A stretch of 63,851 nucleotides of DNA, filler included, from Octopus bimaculoides (lineage: Eukaryota): NCBI RefSeq assembly GCF_001194135.2. It is 8 parts of 7 records of this genome, joined end to end, with 100 filler letters (N's around TTAATTAATTAA, not from the genome) between each part and the next. Parts side by side here need not be neighbours in the genome. Positions count along the whole stretch, not along the records: positions 8,344 to 25,125 come from NC_069009.1; 7 more parts are not named here. One strand, 5' to 3'. This document shows positions 11,037 to 23,547 of the stretch, one piece after another. How positions within the stretch are numbered: position 1 is the first letter of the stretch; every line of letters starts with the position of its first letter. Made by a program: the position numbers and the translations under genes. The notes under the pieces were generated by a model. It worked only from the letters and a program-made list of their open reading frames with translations, searched no databases and was not told where the DNA came from.

Positions 11037-11108
11037 AGTTTTGTTAAGGTGGACAGATGTCGGAAGCTTTCTTTTTTGATTTCTTTGATCTTATTAAAGC
11101 TCAAATCC
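11037..11108 (-). CDS. LRR cassette exon A (72 nt, phase 2-2): DLSFNKIKEIKKESFRHLSTLTKL
   Basis: atatttcAG|G...CT|GTAAGT; encodes one typical-class 24-aa LRR. Confidence 0.9.
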
Positions 11109-11720
11109 CTGAAATATAAAATTGAGTTAATAAGGACTCCTGTGGAACAGATGAGACAGAATACTAATTCTAAACAATTAGAAGAGATGGAAATCAGATT
11201 ACAGTTACGGTCAGTTCGATGATGATGATAGTGATAATATTGGAAAGGAAGCGATGGTGTGGAGAATATAGAGGTAGTGTTGATGACGAAGATGTCATGA
11301 TGCTTATCATGGGGTTGATGTTGTTAATGTTGATTATTCTGATAATGATGGGGATTAACAAGTTTTGTTGATAATGAATATGTTATTGAAAATGATGATG
11401 TTGGTAGTGATGTTCTGTTAGCGGTAATGATTGTGTTGAAGTTTGTACGGCTGAAGATGGAGGAGAAAGAGGAAGAAAAAGAGTAGTGGTAGTAGGAGCA
11501 GAAGAAGAAGGTACAAAGGAAGTTGAAGAGGAAAAAGAAAAGTATATGTATAAAAATTAAAGCATGAATTATGTCGTGCTAAATATACATCTACAGGAGA
11601 ATGTCTGGCATGGCGCTCAGCGTTGATTTAGATGCAAGCAACGACCATGATACACAGATTGAGTTACTCACACCTTTTGATATACTCGCGTTCAATCATC
11701 CATACAGAGAAACCGACACA

Positions 11721-11756
<36 letters not shown>

Positions 11757-11938
11757 NNNNNNNNNNNNNNNNNNNNNNNNNNNNNNNNNNNNNNNNNNNN
11801 NNNNNNNNNNNNNNNNNNNNNNNNNNNNNNNNNNNNNNNNNNNNNNNNNNNNNNNNNNNNNNNNNNNNNNNNNNNNNNNNNNNNNNNNNNNNNNNNNNNN
11901 NNNNNNNNNNNNNNNNNNNNNNNNNNNNNNNNNNNNNN

Positions 11939-12311
11939 AGTGGTTAGGAAAGCGGACTGGCGGTCATAGGATCGCGGTTTCGATTCCCAGACCGGGCGTT
12001 GTGAGTGTTTATTGAGCGAAAAACACCTAAAGCTCCACGAGGCTCTGGCAGGGGATGGTGGCGAACCCTGCTGTACACTTTCACCACAATTTTCTCTCAC
12101 TCTTACTTCCTGTTTCTGTTGTGCATGTAATTCAAAGGGTCAGCCTTGTCACACAGTGTCACGCTGAATATCCCCGAGAACTACGTTAAGGGTACACGTG
12201 TCTGTGGAGTGCTCAGCCACTTGCACGTTAATTTCACGAGCAGGCTGTTCCGTTGATCGGATCAACTGGAACCCTCGACGTCGTAAGCGACGGAGTGCCA
12301 ACAACAACAAC
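11939..12311 (+). mobile_element. tRNA-derived SINE family 1 (tRNA-Arg(TCG)-like head, (CAA)n tail); other copies at 17535-17915(-), 56851-57055(+), 57731-57795(+ head) and 57815-58241(-)
   Basis: A-box TGGCCCAGTGG and B-box GGTTTCGATTCCC in intact heads; copies are near-identical over ~370 bp. Confidence 0.85.
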
Positions 12312-12555
12312 ATGTCTGTGTGTGTGTGTGTGTGTATAAACATATCCATTTTCTATATATTTCCTCTCAAGTATTGCCCTCGCATAAGAACCAGATATCT
12401 GAAATAAACCGACATTCACATTCACAGATTCACAAATAATAAACCACAGCTTTAGAAAGACGGGTGAGGGAGATTCAAATGAAGTATGGGATAATATTAC
12501 AGATGTTGACGTATCTCGTTATAAAATACTATAAAAGAACCGTGATTCAACTTAC

Positions 12556-12627
12556 AGAGATCTTAAGTTGGACAAATATCGGAAGGTTTCTTCTTTGATT
12601 TTCTCGATGTTATTGTAAGTCAAATCC
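12556..12627 (-). CDS. LRR cassette exon B (72 nt, phase 2-2): DLTYNNIEKIKEETFRYLSNLRSL
   Basis: atatttcAG|G...CT|GTAAGT; open frame. Confidence 0.92.
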
Positions 12628-12852
12628 CTGAAATATACAATTGAGTTAAGGCAGATAAATATGCAACAAATTTGTGGAAGAAGAAGAAGAAGAAGAAGAA
12701 GAAGAAGAAGAAGAAGAAGAAGAAGAAGAAGAAGAAGAAGAAGAAGAAGAAGAATCAATTATGTAGTACTAGATATACATCTAGAAGAATATGTCCAGCA
12801 TGGTGCTCAGCATTGATCTAGAGGTAAGTAACGTACTTGATATACAAACAAA

Positions 12853-12938
<86 letters not shown>

Positions 12939-13277
12939 AACATACGCATGTCGTGAATGTTTCCCCTCAAGTATCACGCTCACTTTCCNNNNNNNNNNNN
13001 NNNNNNNNNNNNNNNNNNNNNNNNNNNNNNNNNNNNNNNNNNNNNNNNNNNNNNNNNNNNNNNNNNNNNNNNNNNNNNNNNNNNNNNNNNNNNNNNNNNN
13101 NNNNNNNNNNNNNNNNNNNNNNNNNNNNNNNNNNNNNNNNNNNNNNNNNNNNNNNNNNNNNNNNNNNNNNNNNNNNNNNNNNNNNNNNNNNNNNNNNNNN
13201 NNNNNNNNNNNNNNNNNNNNNNNNNNNNNNNNNNNNNNNNNNNNNNNNNNNTAAAGAAATAAGGATTTCAACTCAGA

Positions 13278-20900: not shown

Positions 20901-21560
20901 ACTTTCTCGGAGGAAGTCTAGGCATCGGTGTGGATCAACGAACCGATCTGTTTCGGAGAACTTTCGGGCCAGGGCCTATGGATAACATCCAGATATCTCT
21001 TGCCTGACAGTGGTACGGAGGGGGCGCTGCCTGATCGAGATAAACTTAACAAGCACAGAAGTGCCGTTAACCGGGCCAGAACGAGATTGCGCAGAACGAT
21101 GAAAGCTTTCTACACGCCCTCGTCCAGTCTCCGAGTATAACTGACCTGTCTGCTTATGTCGAACACCTGCCGTTGGGTGTAGGACGAATCTGGCTATCAA
21201 TTCAATTTGAAAAGGAAGTTTAGGGTGAATAGGGAAGTGTTGCCTTCTAGCAAGTTTTCTGAAGGGTGGGTAAACGTTGGAAGAATGGCCAGTGTGAAAG
21301 GACCAATTCTGGGCGTACACCTGCGAAAAATAAAGGAAGGGCTCTTGCCATGTCCATCAGGTAGCCGTGACTTTTGTAGGGGTTTTTTCCACGAGGACCT
21401 TAAAGCGACTCACCTACTGGGGGTTTTAATTTGTTTAACGTTTTAATGTCATATATATTGTTTACATACTGCAAAACCCATTGTCTCGCCTTGTGTTGCC
21501 TTTTATATTTATGTCATGTCATTTAATGTTATTGTATGTAAGCCTTGTGGCTAATAAAAT
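17920..21560 (+). mobile_element. Degenerate L1/Tx1-clade LINE (ORF1 with zinc knuckle; ORF2 APE + RT remnants, internal deletions)
   Basis: YYCGNDQHLKVDC knuckle (~18606-18644); APE motifs MLKLGYINVSGL, AAGISES, GDWNAV, SYLDRV (19513-20060); RT motif VYADDIT at 20170; many stops; ends near aataaa followed by a microsatellite. Confidence 0.85.
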
Positions 21561-21581
21561 AATCTATAATAATAATAATAA

Positions 21582-21678
<97 letters not shown>

Positions 21679-21699
21679 TATAATTATTATTATTATTAT

Positions 21700-22770
21700 G
21701 TTGTTTTTTTCCTTCTTTCTTGAAATTTTCTTCCATTTCTCGCCGAGTGTTTTCCGTACACCTAGGGCAGAGAAACTCGTTGTATGCAATCCCAGTTTNN
21801 NNNNNNNNNNNNNNNNNNNNNNNNNNNNNNNNNNNNNNNNNNNNNNNNNNNNNNNNNNNNNNNNNNNNNNNNNNNNNNNNNNNNNNNNNNNNNNNNNNNN
21901 NNNNNNNNNNNNNNNNNNNNNNNNNNNNNNNNNNNNNNNNNNNNNNNNNNNNNNNNNNNNNNNNNNNNNNNNNNNNNNNNNNNNNNNNNNNNNNNNNNNN
22001 NNNNNNNNNNNNNNNNNNNNNNNNNNNNNNNNNNNNNNNNNNNNNNNNNNNNNNNNNNNNNNNNNNNNNNNNNNNNNNNNNNNNNNNNNNNNNNNNNNNN
22101 NNNNNNNNNNNNNNNNNNNNNNNNNNNNNNNNNNNNNNNNNNNNNNNNNNNNNNNNNNNNNNNNNNNNNNNNNNNNNNNNNNNNNNNNNNNNNNNNNNNN
22201 NNNNNNNNNNNNNNNNNNNNNNNNNNNNNNNNNNNNNNNNNNNNNNNNNNNNNNNNNNNNNNNNNNNNNNNNNNNNNNNNNNNNNNNNNNNNNNNNNNNN
22301 NNNNNNNNNNNNNNNNNNNNNNNNNNNNNNNNNNNNNNNNNNNNNNNNNNNNNNNNNNNNNNNNNNNNNNNNNNNNNNNNNNNNNNNNNNNNNNNNNNNN
22401 NNNNNNNNNNNNNNNNNNNNNNNNNNNNNNNNNNNNNNNNNNNNNNNNNNNNNNNNNNNNNNNNNNNNNNNNNNNNNNNNNNNNNNNNNNNNNNNNNNNT
22501 ACAACCTGAGATTAGGTGGTCAATAGTTTCAATCGCATCGTTACAAAATCGGCATTTTGGGTCAGCTCCATTTTTTATCACATTGGCTTTGTAGTTCCGG
22601 GTTAATAAGCCTTGGTCTTGAGCAGCCAATATGAAACCTTCACTCTCTGCTTTTAGCCCTGAACTTCGTAACCACTGATGCGTGCGTTTCTGGTCGACAT
22701 CATCTTGTTTGCTACGAGCCACATACTTGCCATGCAGAGGTTTCCGTTCCCATCTGTTAGCTAATTTTTC
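21700..22770 (-). mobile_element. 5'-truncated R4/Dong-like RLE retrotransposon flanked on both sides by (ATT)n
   Basis: EKLANRWERKPLHGKYVARSK...LAAQDQGLLTRNY...CRFCNDAIETIDHLISGC (CCHC finger); centre is in a gap; (ATT)n at 21681-21699 and 22782-22800. Confidence 0.85.
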
Positions 22771-22800
22771 ATTAATAATTTTATTATTATTATTATTATT

Positions 22801-22832
<32 letters not shown>

Positions 22833-23475
22833 CAGTAGTTGTAGTATATCTTCTTGCAGTTGTTAAAGAGAAAGAAAAAGGAGCATGCCATGTTGGAGGA
22901 GGAGGGGAGGAGGAGAAGGGAAATAAATGATCGAAAGAAAAGAATTTATGCAGACTGATCTCTCTTGTTGTAGGAATAAATGATTAAGAAATAGATAAGT
23001 GTAAAATAAATTACTAAGAGTTGGAATGTGTAGAATATACAATTAGAACGGAGAGCCATGAATGGTAATCAGTGTTGAACGAGAAGTAAACATAATAAAA
23101 ATATACAAAAAGATATTTAAAATGTCAAGTCGATACACTCGTGTACATTCACTCACACTCAAAGACACAGAATTAGGTATGCACATACATACACAAAATC
23201 ATATATATTATTTAACAGAAAAAAATAAATACCTCAACAAGCTCATATCCACAATCAGTTATAAACACACACACACACAAGCCCACAAACACAGACACAC
23301 ACGCACAAGCACACACACACACACCTTCCCAGACATTCACAAATAATTACATATTCCTGAGAATATCTAGTATGGCAAGGAGAGTGAGAGATAAAAGCAA
23401 AGAATGGAAAGACATGAAGTGTTTAGAATTAGATTGTCAATAAAACAAAGTATAAAAGAGACTAATCCAACTCAC

Positions 23476-23547
23476 AGAGTCGTTAAACTGGAAAGGTTTT
23501 GAAACGCACCCGTTTCAATTTCATTGATGTCATTGTCTTGCAAATAC
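23476..23547 (-). CDS. LRR cassette exon E (72 nt, phase 2-2): YLQDNDINEIETGAFQNLSSLTTL
   Basis: tttgttacAG|G...CT|GTGAGT; open frame; most divergent cassette. Confidence 0.9.

What the first reader, a model, noticed from the sequence alone, without database searches (positions are those of the whole stretch)
11037..23547. Tandem array of interchangeable single-LRR exon cassettes (candidate diversified LRR receptor locus)
Seen: at least six homologous cassettes on the minus strand (E 23476, D 16292, decayed 14675, C 13672, B 12556, A 11037). The five with intact splice sites all start with G and end with CT, so any junction makes Leu (CT|G) and any subset of the four intact 72-nt cassettes stays in frame. 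Each sits in a duplicated 1-2.6 kb exon+intron unit. Established: 72-nt phase-2 LRR exons occur in LGR/RXFP/GRL101-type and Slit genes, so exon size alone is not new. Inference: recent unit duplication, dead cassettes, and variable concave-face residues (S-F, T-Y, G-R, W-E, Q-D) split across exon junctions suggest a birth-and-death LRR module library. It could be diversified by exon skipping, mutually exclusive splicing (Dscam-like) or conversion (VLR-like).
Basis: partly seen in the sequence, partly recalled or inferred. Interest (0 to 1): 0.9.

Follow-up and report, generated by a model that had tools for sequence, protein, structure and literature searches.

The report
Octopus receptor's one-repeat-per-exon LRR array
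The exon array is real: it is the leucine-rich-repeat part of a gene from an octopus-only family of LRR-bearing adhesion GPCRs, built by duplicating and losing one-repeat exons, and whether the exons are mixed to diversify the receptor is hinted at by related genes but untested here.

Summary
The minus strand carries five intact 72-nt exons (E, D, C, B, A). Each encodes one 24-residue LRR, has AG/GT splice sites, starts with G and ends with CT. There is also one dead copy and a seventh remnant. All lie in homologous exon-plus-intron units that are 69-82% identical.

The three gaps lie in introns, inside repeats, 362-977 nt from any exon. Reading frame is therefore not at stake.

A profile of the cassettes finds, among 1.84 billion proteins, an Octopus-only family as the best matches: signal peptide, LRRNT, n x LRR, LRRCT, Cys-rich region, GAIN/GPS and 7TM. 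NCBI names these "adhesion GPCR G6-like" or "slit-like". One Octopus sinensis paralogue has the same G...CT|gtaagttgaatca units.

The 72-nt phase-2 design is already known from gonadotropin receptors and brown-alga ROCO genes. A VLR-like or Dscam-like mechanism is not supported. Exon skipping is plausible: paralogues carry up to 13 annotated isoforms that differ by exact 24-residue steps. However, five of those 13 contain hybrid cassettes, which points to mis-mapped reads or recombinant alleles. Concave-face codons evolve about neutrally.

Verdict: a new member of a known kind, of moderate interest.

The parts
23476..23547 (-). Exon E: 72 nt, one LRR, (L)YLQDNDINEIETGAFQNLSSLTT(L); acceptor ttgttacag|G, donor CT|gtgagt
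16293..16364 (-). Exon D: 72 nt, one LRR, (L)SLWENNITEIKAETFQNLPSLTN(L); donor CT|gtaagttgaatca
14673..14733 (-). Dead cassette (psi): 61 nt, acceptor kept, in-frame TAA, GT donor lost; both flanks align to the unit
13672..13743 (-). Exon C: 72 nt, one LRR, (L)NLGRNNMKEINEETFRYLSNLRT(L)
12556..12627 (-). Exon B: 72 nt, one LRR, (L)DLTYNNIEKIKEETFRYLSNLRS(L); its 3' half matches C at 34 of 36 nt, its 5' half at 24 of 36
11037..11108 (-). Exon A: 72 nt, one LRR, (L)DLSFNKIKEIKKESFRHLSTLTK(L)
9651..9828 (-). Seventh unit remnant (Z): only ...CT|GAAAGTTGAATCA and the downstream intron and tail survive; donor changed from GT to GA; exon body gone
9827..10993 (.). Foldback element with inverted arms of about 340 nt (72-79% complementary). 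It lies between intron position +43 after exon A and the Z remnant. Its ends recur in an O. bimaculoides locus.
16146..16563 (-). Unit D as an example of the duplicated exon-plus-intron unit. It is homologous to units E, C, B, A and psi, and to the LRR units of O. sinensis locus L001.
11939..12313 (+). SINE copy, cut by gap 11757-11938. It is 95% identical to the copy at 17535-17915 and lies in the opposite orientation. It splits the microsatellite of the B-A intron.
17535..17915 (-). Second copy of the same SINE, inside the 7.1-kb E-D intron
13252..13597 (.). Abundant Octopus repeat (about 184 nt, often in tandem) inserted in the intron after exon C. It abuts gap 12989-13251.
21529..22801 (-). 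LINE 3' end (weak zf-RVT match, then a microsatellite tail) that contains gap 21799-22499
23609..23922 (.). Near-perfect 314-nt hairpin insertion that ends 62 nt upstream of exon E

Best explanation
The piece holds the middle of the ectodomain-coding region of a gene on the minus strand. The gene belongs to an Octopus-lineage family of adhesion GPCRs with an N-terminal LRR domain. Their layout is signal peptide, LRRNT, a variable number of 24-residue LRRs, LRRCT, a Cys-rich region, an SEA-like module, an HRM-like stretch, GAIN/GPS and 7TM.

**Shown**
- Each LRR is one 72-nt exon with phase-2 introns on both sides.
- The exon and about 0.25-0.65 kb of surrounding intron were copied as a unit.
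- Five copies are intact and two are dead.
- Transposons and microsatellites have since filled the introns.

**Inferred**
- The array grew by unequal crossing-over between units.
- The five exons are normally spliced in series (E-D-C-B-A) into one LRR solenoid whose concave face is free to vary.
- The LRRNT exon lies upstream of the piece, and the terminal-LRR, LRRCT, Cys-rich, GAIN and 7TM exons lie downstream of it.
- Individual cassettes can probably be skipped without breaking the frame, as annotated isoforms of paralogues suggest. Whether this happens at this locus, and whether it is regulated, is unknown.
For: **Exon anatomy and unit homology:**

**Selection:** scaffold pN is 0.09, against pS 0.49 and flanking-intron distance 0.36. 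The exons have therefore been under protein-level constraint.

**Family**
- A profile of the five cassettes was searched against 1.84e9 representative proteins. The best hit, and most of the closest matches, are Octopus proteins of one family.
- Members carry LRR plus GPS in one chain (P0173) or GPS plus 7tm_2 (P0169, P0189).
- At O. bimaculoides locus L005, three adjacent same-strand gene models read LRR | Cys-rich | GAIN-GPS-7tm_2.

**DNA-level kinship**
- The unit profile, introns included, hits the LRR exons of O. sinensis locus L001 at E = 3e-33 to 3e-44.
- Those exons have the same G...CT|gtaagttgaatca layout.
- In the P0034 gene model they are joined in genomic order and followed by the LRRCT exon.

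**Fold:** the paralogue's LRR-LRRCT part is predicted with pLDDT 80-98 and matches LRRTM2, Slit2, the Nogo receptor and VLR-derived scaffolds.

**Literature:** an octopus-specific adhesion-GPCR expansion with LRRs in 5 of 22 members, expressed in axial nerve cord, suckers and skin, is described in PMC6408891.
Against: - No LRRNT, LRRCT, GAIN or 7TM exon lies inside the piece. The link to a 7TM receptor rests on homology of the LRR units alone.
- No protein in the 5.8e9-sequence database contains any of the five cassettes, and no window ORF is on record. There is therefore no gene model or transcript evidence for this locus.
- Identity to the nearest paralogue is only 51-55%.
- The locus was not found among six related loci that I fetched.
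Confidence: 0.7

Rival explanations
1. Programmed combinatorial cassette splicing. The array acts as a module library, and different cells or tissues include different subsets of the LRR exons. One gene would then yield many receptor ectodomains. This is the exon-skipping version of the reader's idea.
For: - All cassettes are symmetric: 72 nt, phase 2 at both ends.
- One O. sinensis locus (L002) has 12 cassettes and 13 RefSeq isoforms of 409, 385, 361 and 337 residues. Eight of these are clean whole-cassette combinations.
- A second O. sinensis locus gives isoforms of 525, 501 and 477 residues, including alternative second cassettes.
- An independent O. vulgaris annotation gives 489, 465 and 441 residues.
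- In the closest paralogue, L001, one intact cassette (9629-9700) is left out of the only gene model.
- Brown-alga ROCO genes with the same 72-bp phase-2 LRR exons do show such splicing (PMC11378527).
Against: - Five of the 13 L002 isoforms, and also P0245, contain hybrid cassettes. These are joined at homologous internal AAG|GT sites that lack a polypyrimidine tract. That is what mis-placed reads among cassettes 82-93% identical would produce.
- In L002 the variation is confined to the first few cassettes, and the rest are constant.
- The O. bimaculoides 'decorin-like' isoforms keep a constant LRR region.
- The window's cassettes all have strong consensus splice sites.
- There are no transcript data for this locus.
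Confidence: 0.3
2. Germline copy-number variation instead of splicing. Unequal crossing-over between units makes alleles with different cassette numbers and hybrid cassettes. The 'isoforms' seen in paralogues would then be transcripts from animals, or haplotypes, whose arrays differ from the reference.
For: - The hybrid cassettes are joined at exactly homologous positions, as recombination between repeats would produce.
- Unit homology extends into the introns.
- Dead and truncated units show continuing gain and loss.
- Cassette number differs widely among paralogues.
Against: - No population or haplotype data were available.
- Units in this window are only 69-82% identical, a poor substrate for frequent recombination. 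The L002 units are much more alike.
Confidence: 0.25
3. A decaying, unexpressed relic: a leftover LRR array from a dead or rearranged paralogue that is no longer part of a working gene.
For: - No gene model or protein in the databases contains the cassettes.
- Two of the seven units are dead.
- Transposons lie right next to exons A and E.
- Whole-exon dN/dS among D, C, B and A is 0.5-1.2.
Against: - Five of five remaining cassettes keep an open frame, both splice sites and every scaffold residue, at 20-40% neutral divergence.
- RefSeq models of O. bimaculoides paralogues often start at the LRRCT exon ('MMCGCHLPA...') and leave intact LRR units upstream unannotated. A missing model is therefore weak evidence.
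Confidence: 0.12
4. Dscam-like mutually exclusive splicing: only one cassette of the cluster enters each mRNA, chosen by competing RNA pairings.
For: The exons are tandem, the same length, the same phase and similar in sequence, which are the usual screening criteria for such clusters.
Against: - The only inverted repeats are transposon arms and (TA)n tracts.
- The best candidate docking window pairs with the unit flanks no better than with random intron segments, within about 1-2 SD.
- Introns are 1-7 kb long.
- Paralogue proteins contain four to eight array cassettes in a row.
- An LRR solenoid needs several repeats.
Confidence: 0.03
5. VLR-like somatic assembly: the cassettes are donor modules copied into an incomplete gene in somatic cells.
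For: The modules are 24-residue LRRs of the same structural class as lamprey LRRV modules. The paralogue model matches VLR-derived scaffolds.
Against: - Every live cassette has its own acceptor and donor.
- All cassettes lie in one orientation and order.
- In the paralogue they are ordinary exons of a gene model.
- No incomplete acceptor gene was seen.
Confidence: 0.01

Closest known systems
Octopus-specific adhesion GPCR expansion ('group 3' of Ritschard et al. 2019, PMC6408891; RefSeq names 'adhesion GPCR G6-like', 'slit homolog-like', 'LRRC15-like', 'chaoptin', 'decorin-like')
   Same: - These proteins are the best matches to the cassettes among 1.84e9 proteins.
- The LRR type is the same 24-residue repeat.
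- The closest member (O. sinensis L001/P0034) has the same 72-nt G...CT exons with homologous introns.
- Cassette number varies among members.
   Different: - The window's cassettes are only 51-55% identical to any listed member and are not in any gene model.
- The non-LRR exons are outside the piece.
- The paper reports LRRs in 5 of 22 members but does not describe the exon array or its isoforms.
Brown-alga ROCO genes (Ectocarpus, Saccharina): LRR exon shuffling (PMC3341825, PMC11378527)
   Same: - Each LRR is one 72-bp phase-2 exon.
- Exon-intron units are duplicated in tandem and decay.
- The variable residues lie on the concave face.
- Alternative combinations of LRR exons have been reported, and the same 'module library' idea has been proposed.
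   Different: - The ROCO proteins are intracellular LRR-ROC-COR GTPases with a different LRR consensus.
- They come from an unrelated lineage.
- Positive selection was shown there, not here.
Glycoprotein-hormone receptor / LGR and Slit genes of animals
   Same: - Extracellular 24-residue LRRs are encoded by exons of about 72 nt.
- The gonadotropin receptor introns are all phase 2 (cited in PMC11378527). The exon layout of Slit and the other LGRs rests on my own knowledge.
- Single exons can be skipped in frame. LGR5 has a variant that skips exon 5 (PMC11678308).
   Different: - Those duplications are ancient, and their introns no longer resemble each other.
- Here the introns are still 70-80% alike and dead copies remain.
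- The 7TM part of the octopus family is class B (adhesion), not class A.
Tetrahymena 90-bp LRR exon arrays (PMC6564038)
   Same: [quoted passage not shown]
- A 'junction' amino acid is shared between neighbouring exons.
- Growth is by unequal crossing-over near retrotransposons.
   Different: The exons are 90 bp, the organism is a ciliate, and there are thousands of genes.
Lamprey and hagfish VLR genes
   Same: 24-residue LRR modules between LRRNT and LRRCT caps; the predicted paralogue fold matches VLR-derived scaffolds.
   Different: VLR cassettes lack splice sites and are copied somatically into an incomplete gene. Here the cassettes are ordinary exons.
Arthropod Dscam1 exon clusters
   Same: Tandem duplicated exons of equal length and phase.
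   Different: Dscam uses one exon per cluster, chosen through docking/selector RNA pairing. No such pairing is seen here, and many cassettes are used together.

Membership tests
One-LRR-per-exon, phase-2 LRR exon array (LGR / Slit / brown-alga ROCO type) | Each exon encodes exactly one repeat of about 24 residues (72 nt) | tested here: met
   Five exons of exactly 72 nt, each one LxxLxLxxNxIxxIxxxxFxxLxx unit
One-LRR-per-exon, phase-2 LRR exon array (LGR / Slit / brown-alga ROCO type) | The same intron phase (2) on both sides, with a shared junction codon | tested here: met
   All five start with G and end with CT, so the junction CT|G encodes Leu
Octopus LRR-adhesion GPCR family (ADGRG6-like; Ritschard group 3) | LRR units homologous to those of family members at both protein and DNA level | tested here: met
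   The top profile hits are family members. The unit profile, introns included, hits the L001 cassettes at E = 3e-33 to 3e-44. The splice-site layout is identical.
Octopus LRR-adhesion GPCR family (ADGRG6-like; Ritschard group 3) | LRRNT, LRRCT (CGCHLPA.VNY) and Cys-rich exons in the same gene | tested here: not met
   tblastn with 13 family proteins finds none of these exons within 8344-25125. By comparison with L001 they are expected outside the piece, so this is a limit of the piece and not a contradiction.
Octopus LRR-adhesion GPCR family (ADGRG6-like; Ritschard group 3) | GAIN/GPS and a class-B 7TM domain downstream on the same strand | not testable with these tools
   The piece ends 2.7 kb after exon A. 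Family members do show these domains (P0173, P0169, P0189; locus L005).
Combinatorial cassette-exon skipping | Transcripts of this locus with different cassette subsets | not testable with these tools
Only paralogues show isoforms in 24-residue steps, and some of those carry suspect hybrid cassettes.
Dscam-like mutually exclusive splicing | One docking site complementary to a selector sequence next to each variant exon | tested here: not met
   Inverted repeats are only transposon arms and (TA)n tracts. The best shared duplex lies within about 1-2 SD of random intron segments.
Dscam-like mutually exclusive splicing | Exactly one cassette per mRNA | tested here: not met
   This could be tested only on paralogues: their models contain four to eight array cassettes in series
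VLR-like somatic assembly | Donor cassettes without splice sites that flank an incomplete germline gene | tested here: not met
   All live cassettes have AG and GT sites and lie in one orientation and order
Diversifying selection on the binding face | dN/dS clearly above 1 at concave-face codons | tested here: inconclusive
   Concave pN is 0.54 against pS 0.49 over 45 non-independent pairs of 10 cassettes. Concave pN exceeds pS in only 24 of 45 pairs.

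The most novel reading that the evidence does not exclude
Octopuses have a lineage-specific family of adhesion GPCRs whose ligand-binding LRR domain is assembled from arrays of individually skippable, rapidly duplicating single-repeat exons. 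Splicing choice, array-length polymorphism, or both would then give each gene many ectodomain variants. This would be a recognition-receptor repertoire in suckers, skin, nerve cord or gill, and the animal counterpart of what has been proposed for brown-alga ROCO genes. The window would be an unannotated member of that system.
Probability: 0.2. Interest if true: 0.75.

Novelty: new member of a known kind. Interest (0 to 1): 0.42.

Why it matters
Cephalopods have no known somatically diversified receptors. Their known lineage-specific expansions, protocadherins and GPCRs, are thought to underlie neural and sensory novelty. This locus shows that one expanded adhesion-GPCR family builds its binding domain from young, still-turning-over one-repeat exons.

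Public annotations of sister loci already list up to 13 cassette combinations per gene. If those combinations are real, the family would be a compact source of receptor diversity that nobody has described. If they are mapping artefacts, they are a warning about isoform calls in repeat-encoded domains.

There is also a practical point. Many RefSeq models of this family in O. bimaculoides start at the LRRCT exon and miss the LRR arrays upstream. Domain counts such as 'LRR in 5 of 22' are therefore probably underestimates.

Tried and rejected
2. **Direct protein search.** A search with the E-D-C-B-A concatenate returned only one weak, unrelated hit. The word index missed even the 51%-identical paralogue, so only the absence of exact matches is meaningful.
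3. I used an alignment of five 31-residue genomic translations instead.
4. **Exact look-up.** None of ten window ORFs was on record.
5. **PDB and Pfam.** Searches with the concatenate gave only generic LRR hits: ALS, TLR3, LGR5 and LRIG1. These do not discriminate between families.
6. **Docking/selector search.** Nothing rose above background.
7. **Rfam and tRNA scans.** Both found nothing.
8. **Searching for the window's own locus.** I looked upstream of five family gene models (one O. sinensis, four O. bimaculoides), and a sixth locus (L002) was also fetched. Only shared repeats matched. Look-ups of P0154 and P0171 found no record.
9. **Missing isoforms.** A search with P0154 did not return its isoforms X1-X3.
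10. **Positive selection.** This was rejected as unproven. Pairwise alignments made the exons look more diverged than the introns. With a multiple alignment and synonymous sites as the yardstick, the concave face is about neutral.
11. **Gene conversion between C and B.** Their 3' halves match at 34 of 36 nt. The numbers are too small to separate conversion from constraint.
12. **Cys-rich region.** It was modelled poorly (pLDDT 37-52) and has no Pfam hit. I make no claim about its fold.

Full report
**1. What is in the sequence**

The usable piece is 8344-25125 (16.8 kb) and contains four N runs. On the minus strand a pattern scan finds five exons of exactly 72 nt with canonical splice sites (read directly):
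- E, 23547-23476
- D, 16364-16293
- C, 13743-13672
- B, 12627-12556
- A, 11108-11037

Each exon begins with G after a ...yag acceptor. Each ends with CT before gtaagt (gtgagt in E). Every intron therefore falls after the second base of a Leu codon (CT|G).

Each exon translates to one 24-residue 'typical' LRR of the form x-L-x-x-N-x-I-x-x-I-x-x-x-x-F-x-x-L-x-x-L-x-x. The concatenate scores E = 1.4e-45 against Pfam LRR_8.

Because the intron starts with GTAAG or GTGAG, retaining any of these introns would put a stop codon immediately after the junction Leu.

**2. The duplicated unit, the dead copies and the gaps**

*Unit homology.* Self-comparison, a multiple alignment and a profile scan show that each exon sits in a homologous exon-plus-intron unit.
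- Flanks match at 69-82% over 100-430 nt.
- The first 13 intron bases (gtaagttgaatca) and the acceptor region (aactcaattttatgtt.cag) are shared.

*Dead copies.*
- A sixth copy at 14733-14673 is dead: 61 nt, an in-frame TAA and no GT donor.
- The exon body of that seventh copy is replaced by a foldback element with arms of about 340 nt (10993-9827).

*Rest of each period.* It is microsatellite, two copies of one SINE, an abundant repeat of about 184 nt, and LINE debris.

*Gaps.* All three gaps in the finding lie in introns, 362-977 nt from the nearest exon, so reading frame is not at issue.
- Gap 11757-11938 lies between the head of a SINE and a (TA)n tract. This is the place where the other units carry their microsatellite.
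- Gap 12989-13251 lies between the 184-nt repeat family and the conserved 'tail' of unit C, which aligns with the tails of units B and Z.
- Gap 21799-22499 has LINE 3' sequence on both sides.

This makes a hidden cassette unlikely but does not exclude it.

**3. What gene this is**

*Uninformative searches.* The concatenate alone gives only generic LRR hits in the PDB: ALS, TLR3, LGR5 and LRIG1. It has no exact or near match among 5.8e9 predicted proteins.

*The profile search.* A profile of the five cassettes was searched against 1.84e9 representative proteins. One hit stood out: 286 bits over 10 repeats. By BLAST, most of the closest proteins form one group.

*The family.* A follow-up search names these proteins. 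They are all from Octopus sinensis, O. vulgaris or O. bimaculoides. NCBI labels them 'adhesion G-protein coupled receptor G6-like', 'slit homolog-like', 'LRRC15-like', 'chaoptin' or 'decorin-like'.

Their sequences share one layout:
1. signal peptide
2. LRRNT
3. a variable run of 24-residue LRRs
4. an LRRCT with CGCHLPA.VNY
5. a Cys-rich stretch ending CC.G..CNKNDF
6. an SEA-like module
7. an HRM-like stretch
8. GAIN/GPS and a class-B 7TM domain

Supporting observations:
- P0173 has LRR and GPS in one chain.
- P0169 and P0189 have GPS plus 7tm_2.
- At O. bimaculoides locus L005, three adjacent same-strand models read LRR | Cys-rich | GAIN-GPS-7tm_2. Fragmented annotation is therefore common in this family.

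This is the 'octopus-specific group 3' adhesion-GPCR expansion of Ritschard et al. 2019. That paper reports LRRs in 5 of 22 members, with expression in axial nerve cord, suckers and skin (O. bimaculoides) or gill (C. minor) (PMC6408891).

*The DNA-level link.* O. sinensis contig VCDQ01005240.1 (L001) encodes P0034.
- Its LRR exons have exactly the same layout as the window's (G...CT|gtaagttgaatca).
- The window's unit profile, introns included, hits them at E = 3e-33 to 3e-44. Against the more distant locus L002 the best value is only about 1e-10.
- In the P0034 model the cassettes are joined in genomic order. They are followed by a terminal LRR exon, a 168-nt LRRCT exon and the Cys-rich exons.

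No such non-LRR exon lies inside the piece. Membership in the receptor family is therefore inferred from the LRR units alone.

*Species.* The SINE copies are 95-96% identical to copies in O. bimaculoides loci and 92-93% identical to O. sinensis copies. The O. bimaculoides assembly has the same gap-rich style. The window is probably O. bimaculoides, with low confidence. Its own locus was not among the six I fetched.

*Fold.* A structure model of P0034 is confident for LRR-LRRCT (pLDDT 80-98). It matches LRRTM2, Slit2 domains, the Nogo receptor, LGR5 and VLR-derived scaffolds.

**4. How it most likely works**

*Shown.* One LRR per exon; unit duplication; two dead units; strong constraint on the scaffold residues.

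*Inferred.*
- The array grew by unequal crossing-over between units.
- The five live exons are spliced in series into one solenoid.

*Selection.* I pooled the five window cassettes with five L001 cassettes.

| Site class | Distance |
|---|---|
| Flanking introns (p) | 0.36 |
| Synonymous sites (pS) | 0.49 |
| All non-synonymous sites (pN) | 0.31 |
| Scaffold positions (pN) | 0.09 |
| Other x positions (pN) | 0.33 |
| Concave-face positions x2, x3, x5, x7, x8, x10 (pN) | 0.54 |

The concave face is unconstrained (ratio about 1.1) but not demonstrably under positive selection. The pairs are not independent and the exons are short. The earlier impression that exons diverge faster than introns mostly reflects conserved splice-proximal intron sequence.

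**5. Is it a diversifying system?**

*VLR-like assembly is not supported.* The cassettes are ordinary exons with their own splice sites, in one orientation and order.

*Dscam-like exclusivity is not supported.*
- The only inverted repeats are transposon arms and (TA)n tracts.
- The best shared 'docking' duplex is no better than random intron segments, within about 1-2 SD.
- Paralogue proteins carry four to eight array cassettes together.

*Exon skipping is a live possibility, on indirect evidence.*
- O. sinensis locus L002 has 12 cassettes (72 nt, phase 2, junction TT|A = Leu).
- It has 13 RefSeq isoforms of 409, 385 (x4), 361 (x5) and 337 (x3) residues, in steps of exactly 24.
- Decoding shows eight clean whole-cassette combinations. 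They differ mainly in the first five cassettes. Cassettes 6-10 are almost constant, and cassettes 11 and 12 are never used.
- A second O. sinensis locus gives 525, 501 and 477 residues, with alternative second cassettes.
- An independent O. vulgaris annotation gives 489, 465 and 441 residues.
- In L001 one intact cassette is absent from the only model.

*Against taking these isoforms at face value.*
- Five of the 13 L002 isoforms, and P0245, carry hybrid cassettes. The 5' half of one cassette is joined to the 3' half of another at the homologous AAG|GT position. That position has no polypyrimidine tract in front of the 'acceptor'.
- This is what mis-placed short reads among exons 82-93% identical would produce. 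It is also what transcripts from recombinant alleles would produce.
- The O. bimaculoides 'decorin-like' isoforms keep a constant LRR region.

Three sources of apparent diversity therefore remain unseparated: splicing choice, germline array polymorphism and annotation artefact.

**6. Comparison with what is known**

- **Gonadotropin receptors.** Their LRR exons are of similar size and all their introns are phase 2 (Koo 1991, as cited in PMC11378527).
[quoted passage not shown] They show exon shuffling, concave-face selection and alternative LRR-exon combinations (PMC11378527, PMC3341825). Those authors already put forward the 'module library / adaptive-like' idea.
- **Tetrahymena.** It has 90-bp phase-2 LRR exon arrays with a shared junction residue (PMC6564038).
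- **The octopus expansion itself.** It is published (PMC6408891), but I found no paper describing its exon-per-repeat arrays or cassette isoforms.

The locus is therefore a new, apparently unannotated member of a known family, built in a known way.

What is distinctive for an animal gene is the youth of the duplications: the introns are still 70-80% alike and dead copies are still visible. The annotated cassette isoforms in sister loci are also unusual.

**7. Verdict**

- Novelty: a new member of a known kind.
- Interest is moderate (0.42). The structure is ordinary, but it points to an undescribed and directly testable possibility of LRR-cassette diversity in an octopus-specific receptor family.

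Noticed in passing
window 23609-23922: A near-perfect 314-nt hairpin ends 62 nt upstream of the acceptor of exon E. As RNA it folds at -225 kcal/mol, with z = -34 against shuffles. It looks like a palindromic insertion, and no copy was found in the six related loci. It could affect branch-point use for exon E.
   Followed up: partly
window 12900-12950, 11715-11756, 9638-9680: Self-complementary (TA)n tracts sit in the introns on both sides of exons B and A. Pairing across an exon could in principle loop it out, giving skipping or back-splicing. Such tracts are common in this genome, and this was not tested.
   Followed up: no
L003 5161-8207 and L004 458-4402 (O. bimaculoides CM046629.1): RefSeq models P0165 and P0181, and the UniProt entry P0171, start at 'MMCGCHLPA...', which is the LRRCT exon with an internal Met taken as the start. 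For the two fetched loci (P0165 and P0181), LRR units homologous to the window's lie unannotated just upstream. LRR content of this family is probably under-counted.
   Followed up: partly
L002 (O. sinensis VCDQ01004985.1), cassettes at 11135, 13847, 20228; proteins P0039, P0225, P0220, P0222, P0231, P0245: Several RefSeq isoforms contain hybrid LRR cassettes joined inside the exons at the homologous AAG|GT position. The cause is either an annotation artefact among near-identical repeats or a trace of recombinant alleles.
   Followed up: partly
L002 12935-31739: In this paralogue two cassette types alternate (NNISTIKEG.FTGLSNLKEL and NKISRIEKEMFQGLHNLEKL), each with its own intron flank. The duplicated unit there is therefore a pair of exons. 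Same-type cassettes are 82-93% identical, much younger than the copies in the window.
   Followed up: partly
P0034 residues about 180-270 (family-wide): The Cys-rich stretch between the LRRCT and the SEA-like module (QCQTCSG..C...CC.G..CNKNDF) has no Pfam hit and was modelled at pLDDT 37-52. The CC....CN ending recalls Ly6/uPAR domains, but that comparison is from memory only.
   Followed up: partly
window 9827-10993: A foldback element of about 1.17 kb with inverted arms of about 340 nt sits exactly between intron position +43 after exon A and the donor of the dead seventh unit. Its insertion, or a deletion linked to it, probably removed that exon. Its terminal 100 nt or so recur in O. bimaculoides locus L003.
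   Followed up: partly
window 24388-25125: Two copies of another short interspersed repeat lie in inverted orientation (25125-24973 against 24684-24839, 90% identical). It has many copies, 84-93% identical, in O. sinensis L001.
   Followed up: no
window 18300-21400 (+ strand): Degenerate, frameshifted retrotransposon remnants lie antisense to the gene inside the 7.1-kb E-D intron. They include a zinc-knuckle-like ORF, an endonuclease-like ORF and a YADD reverse-transcriptase motif. They gave no Pfam hit at E <= 0.01.
   Followed up: partly
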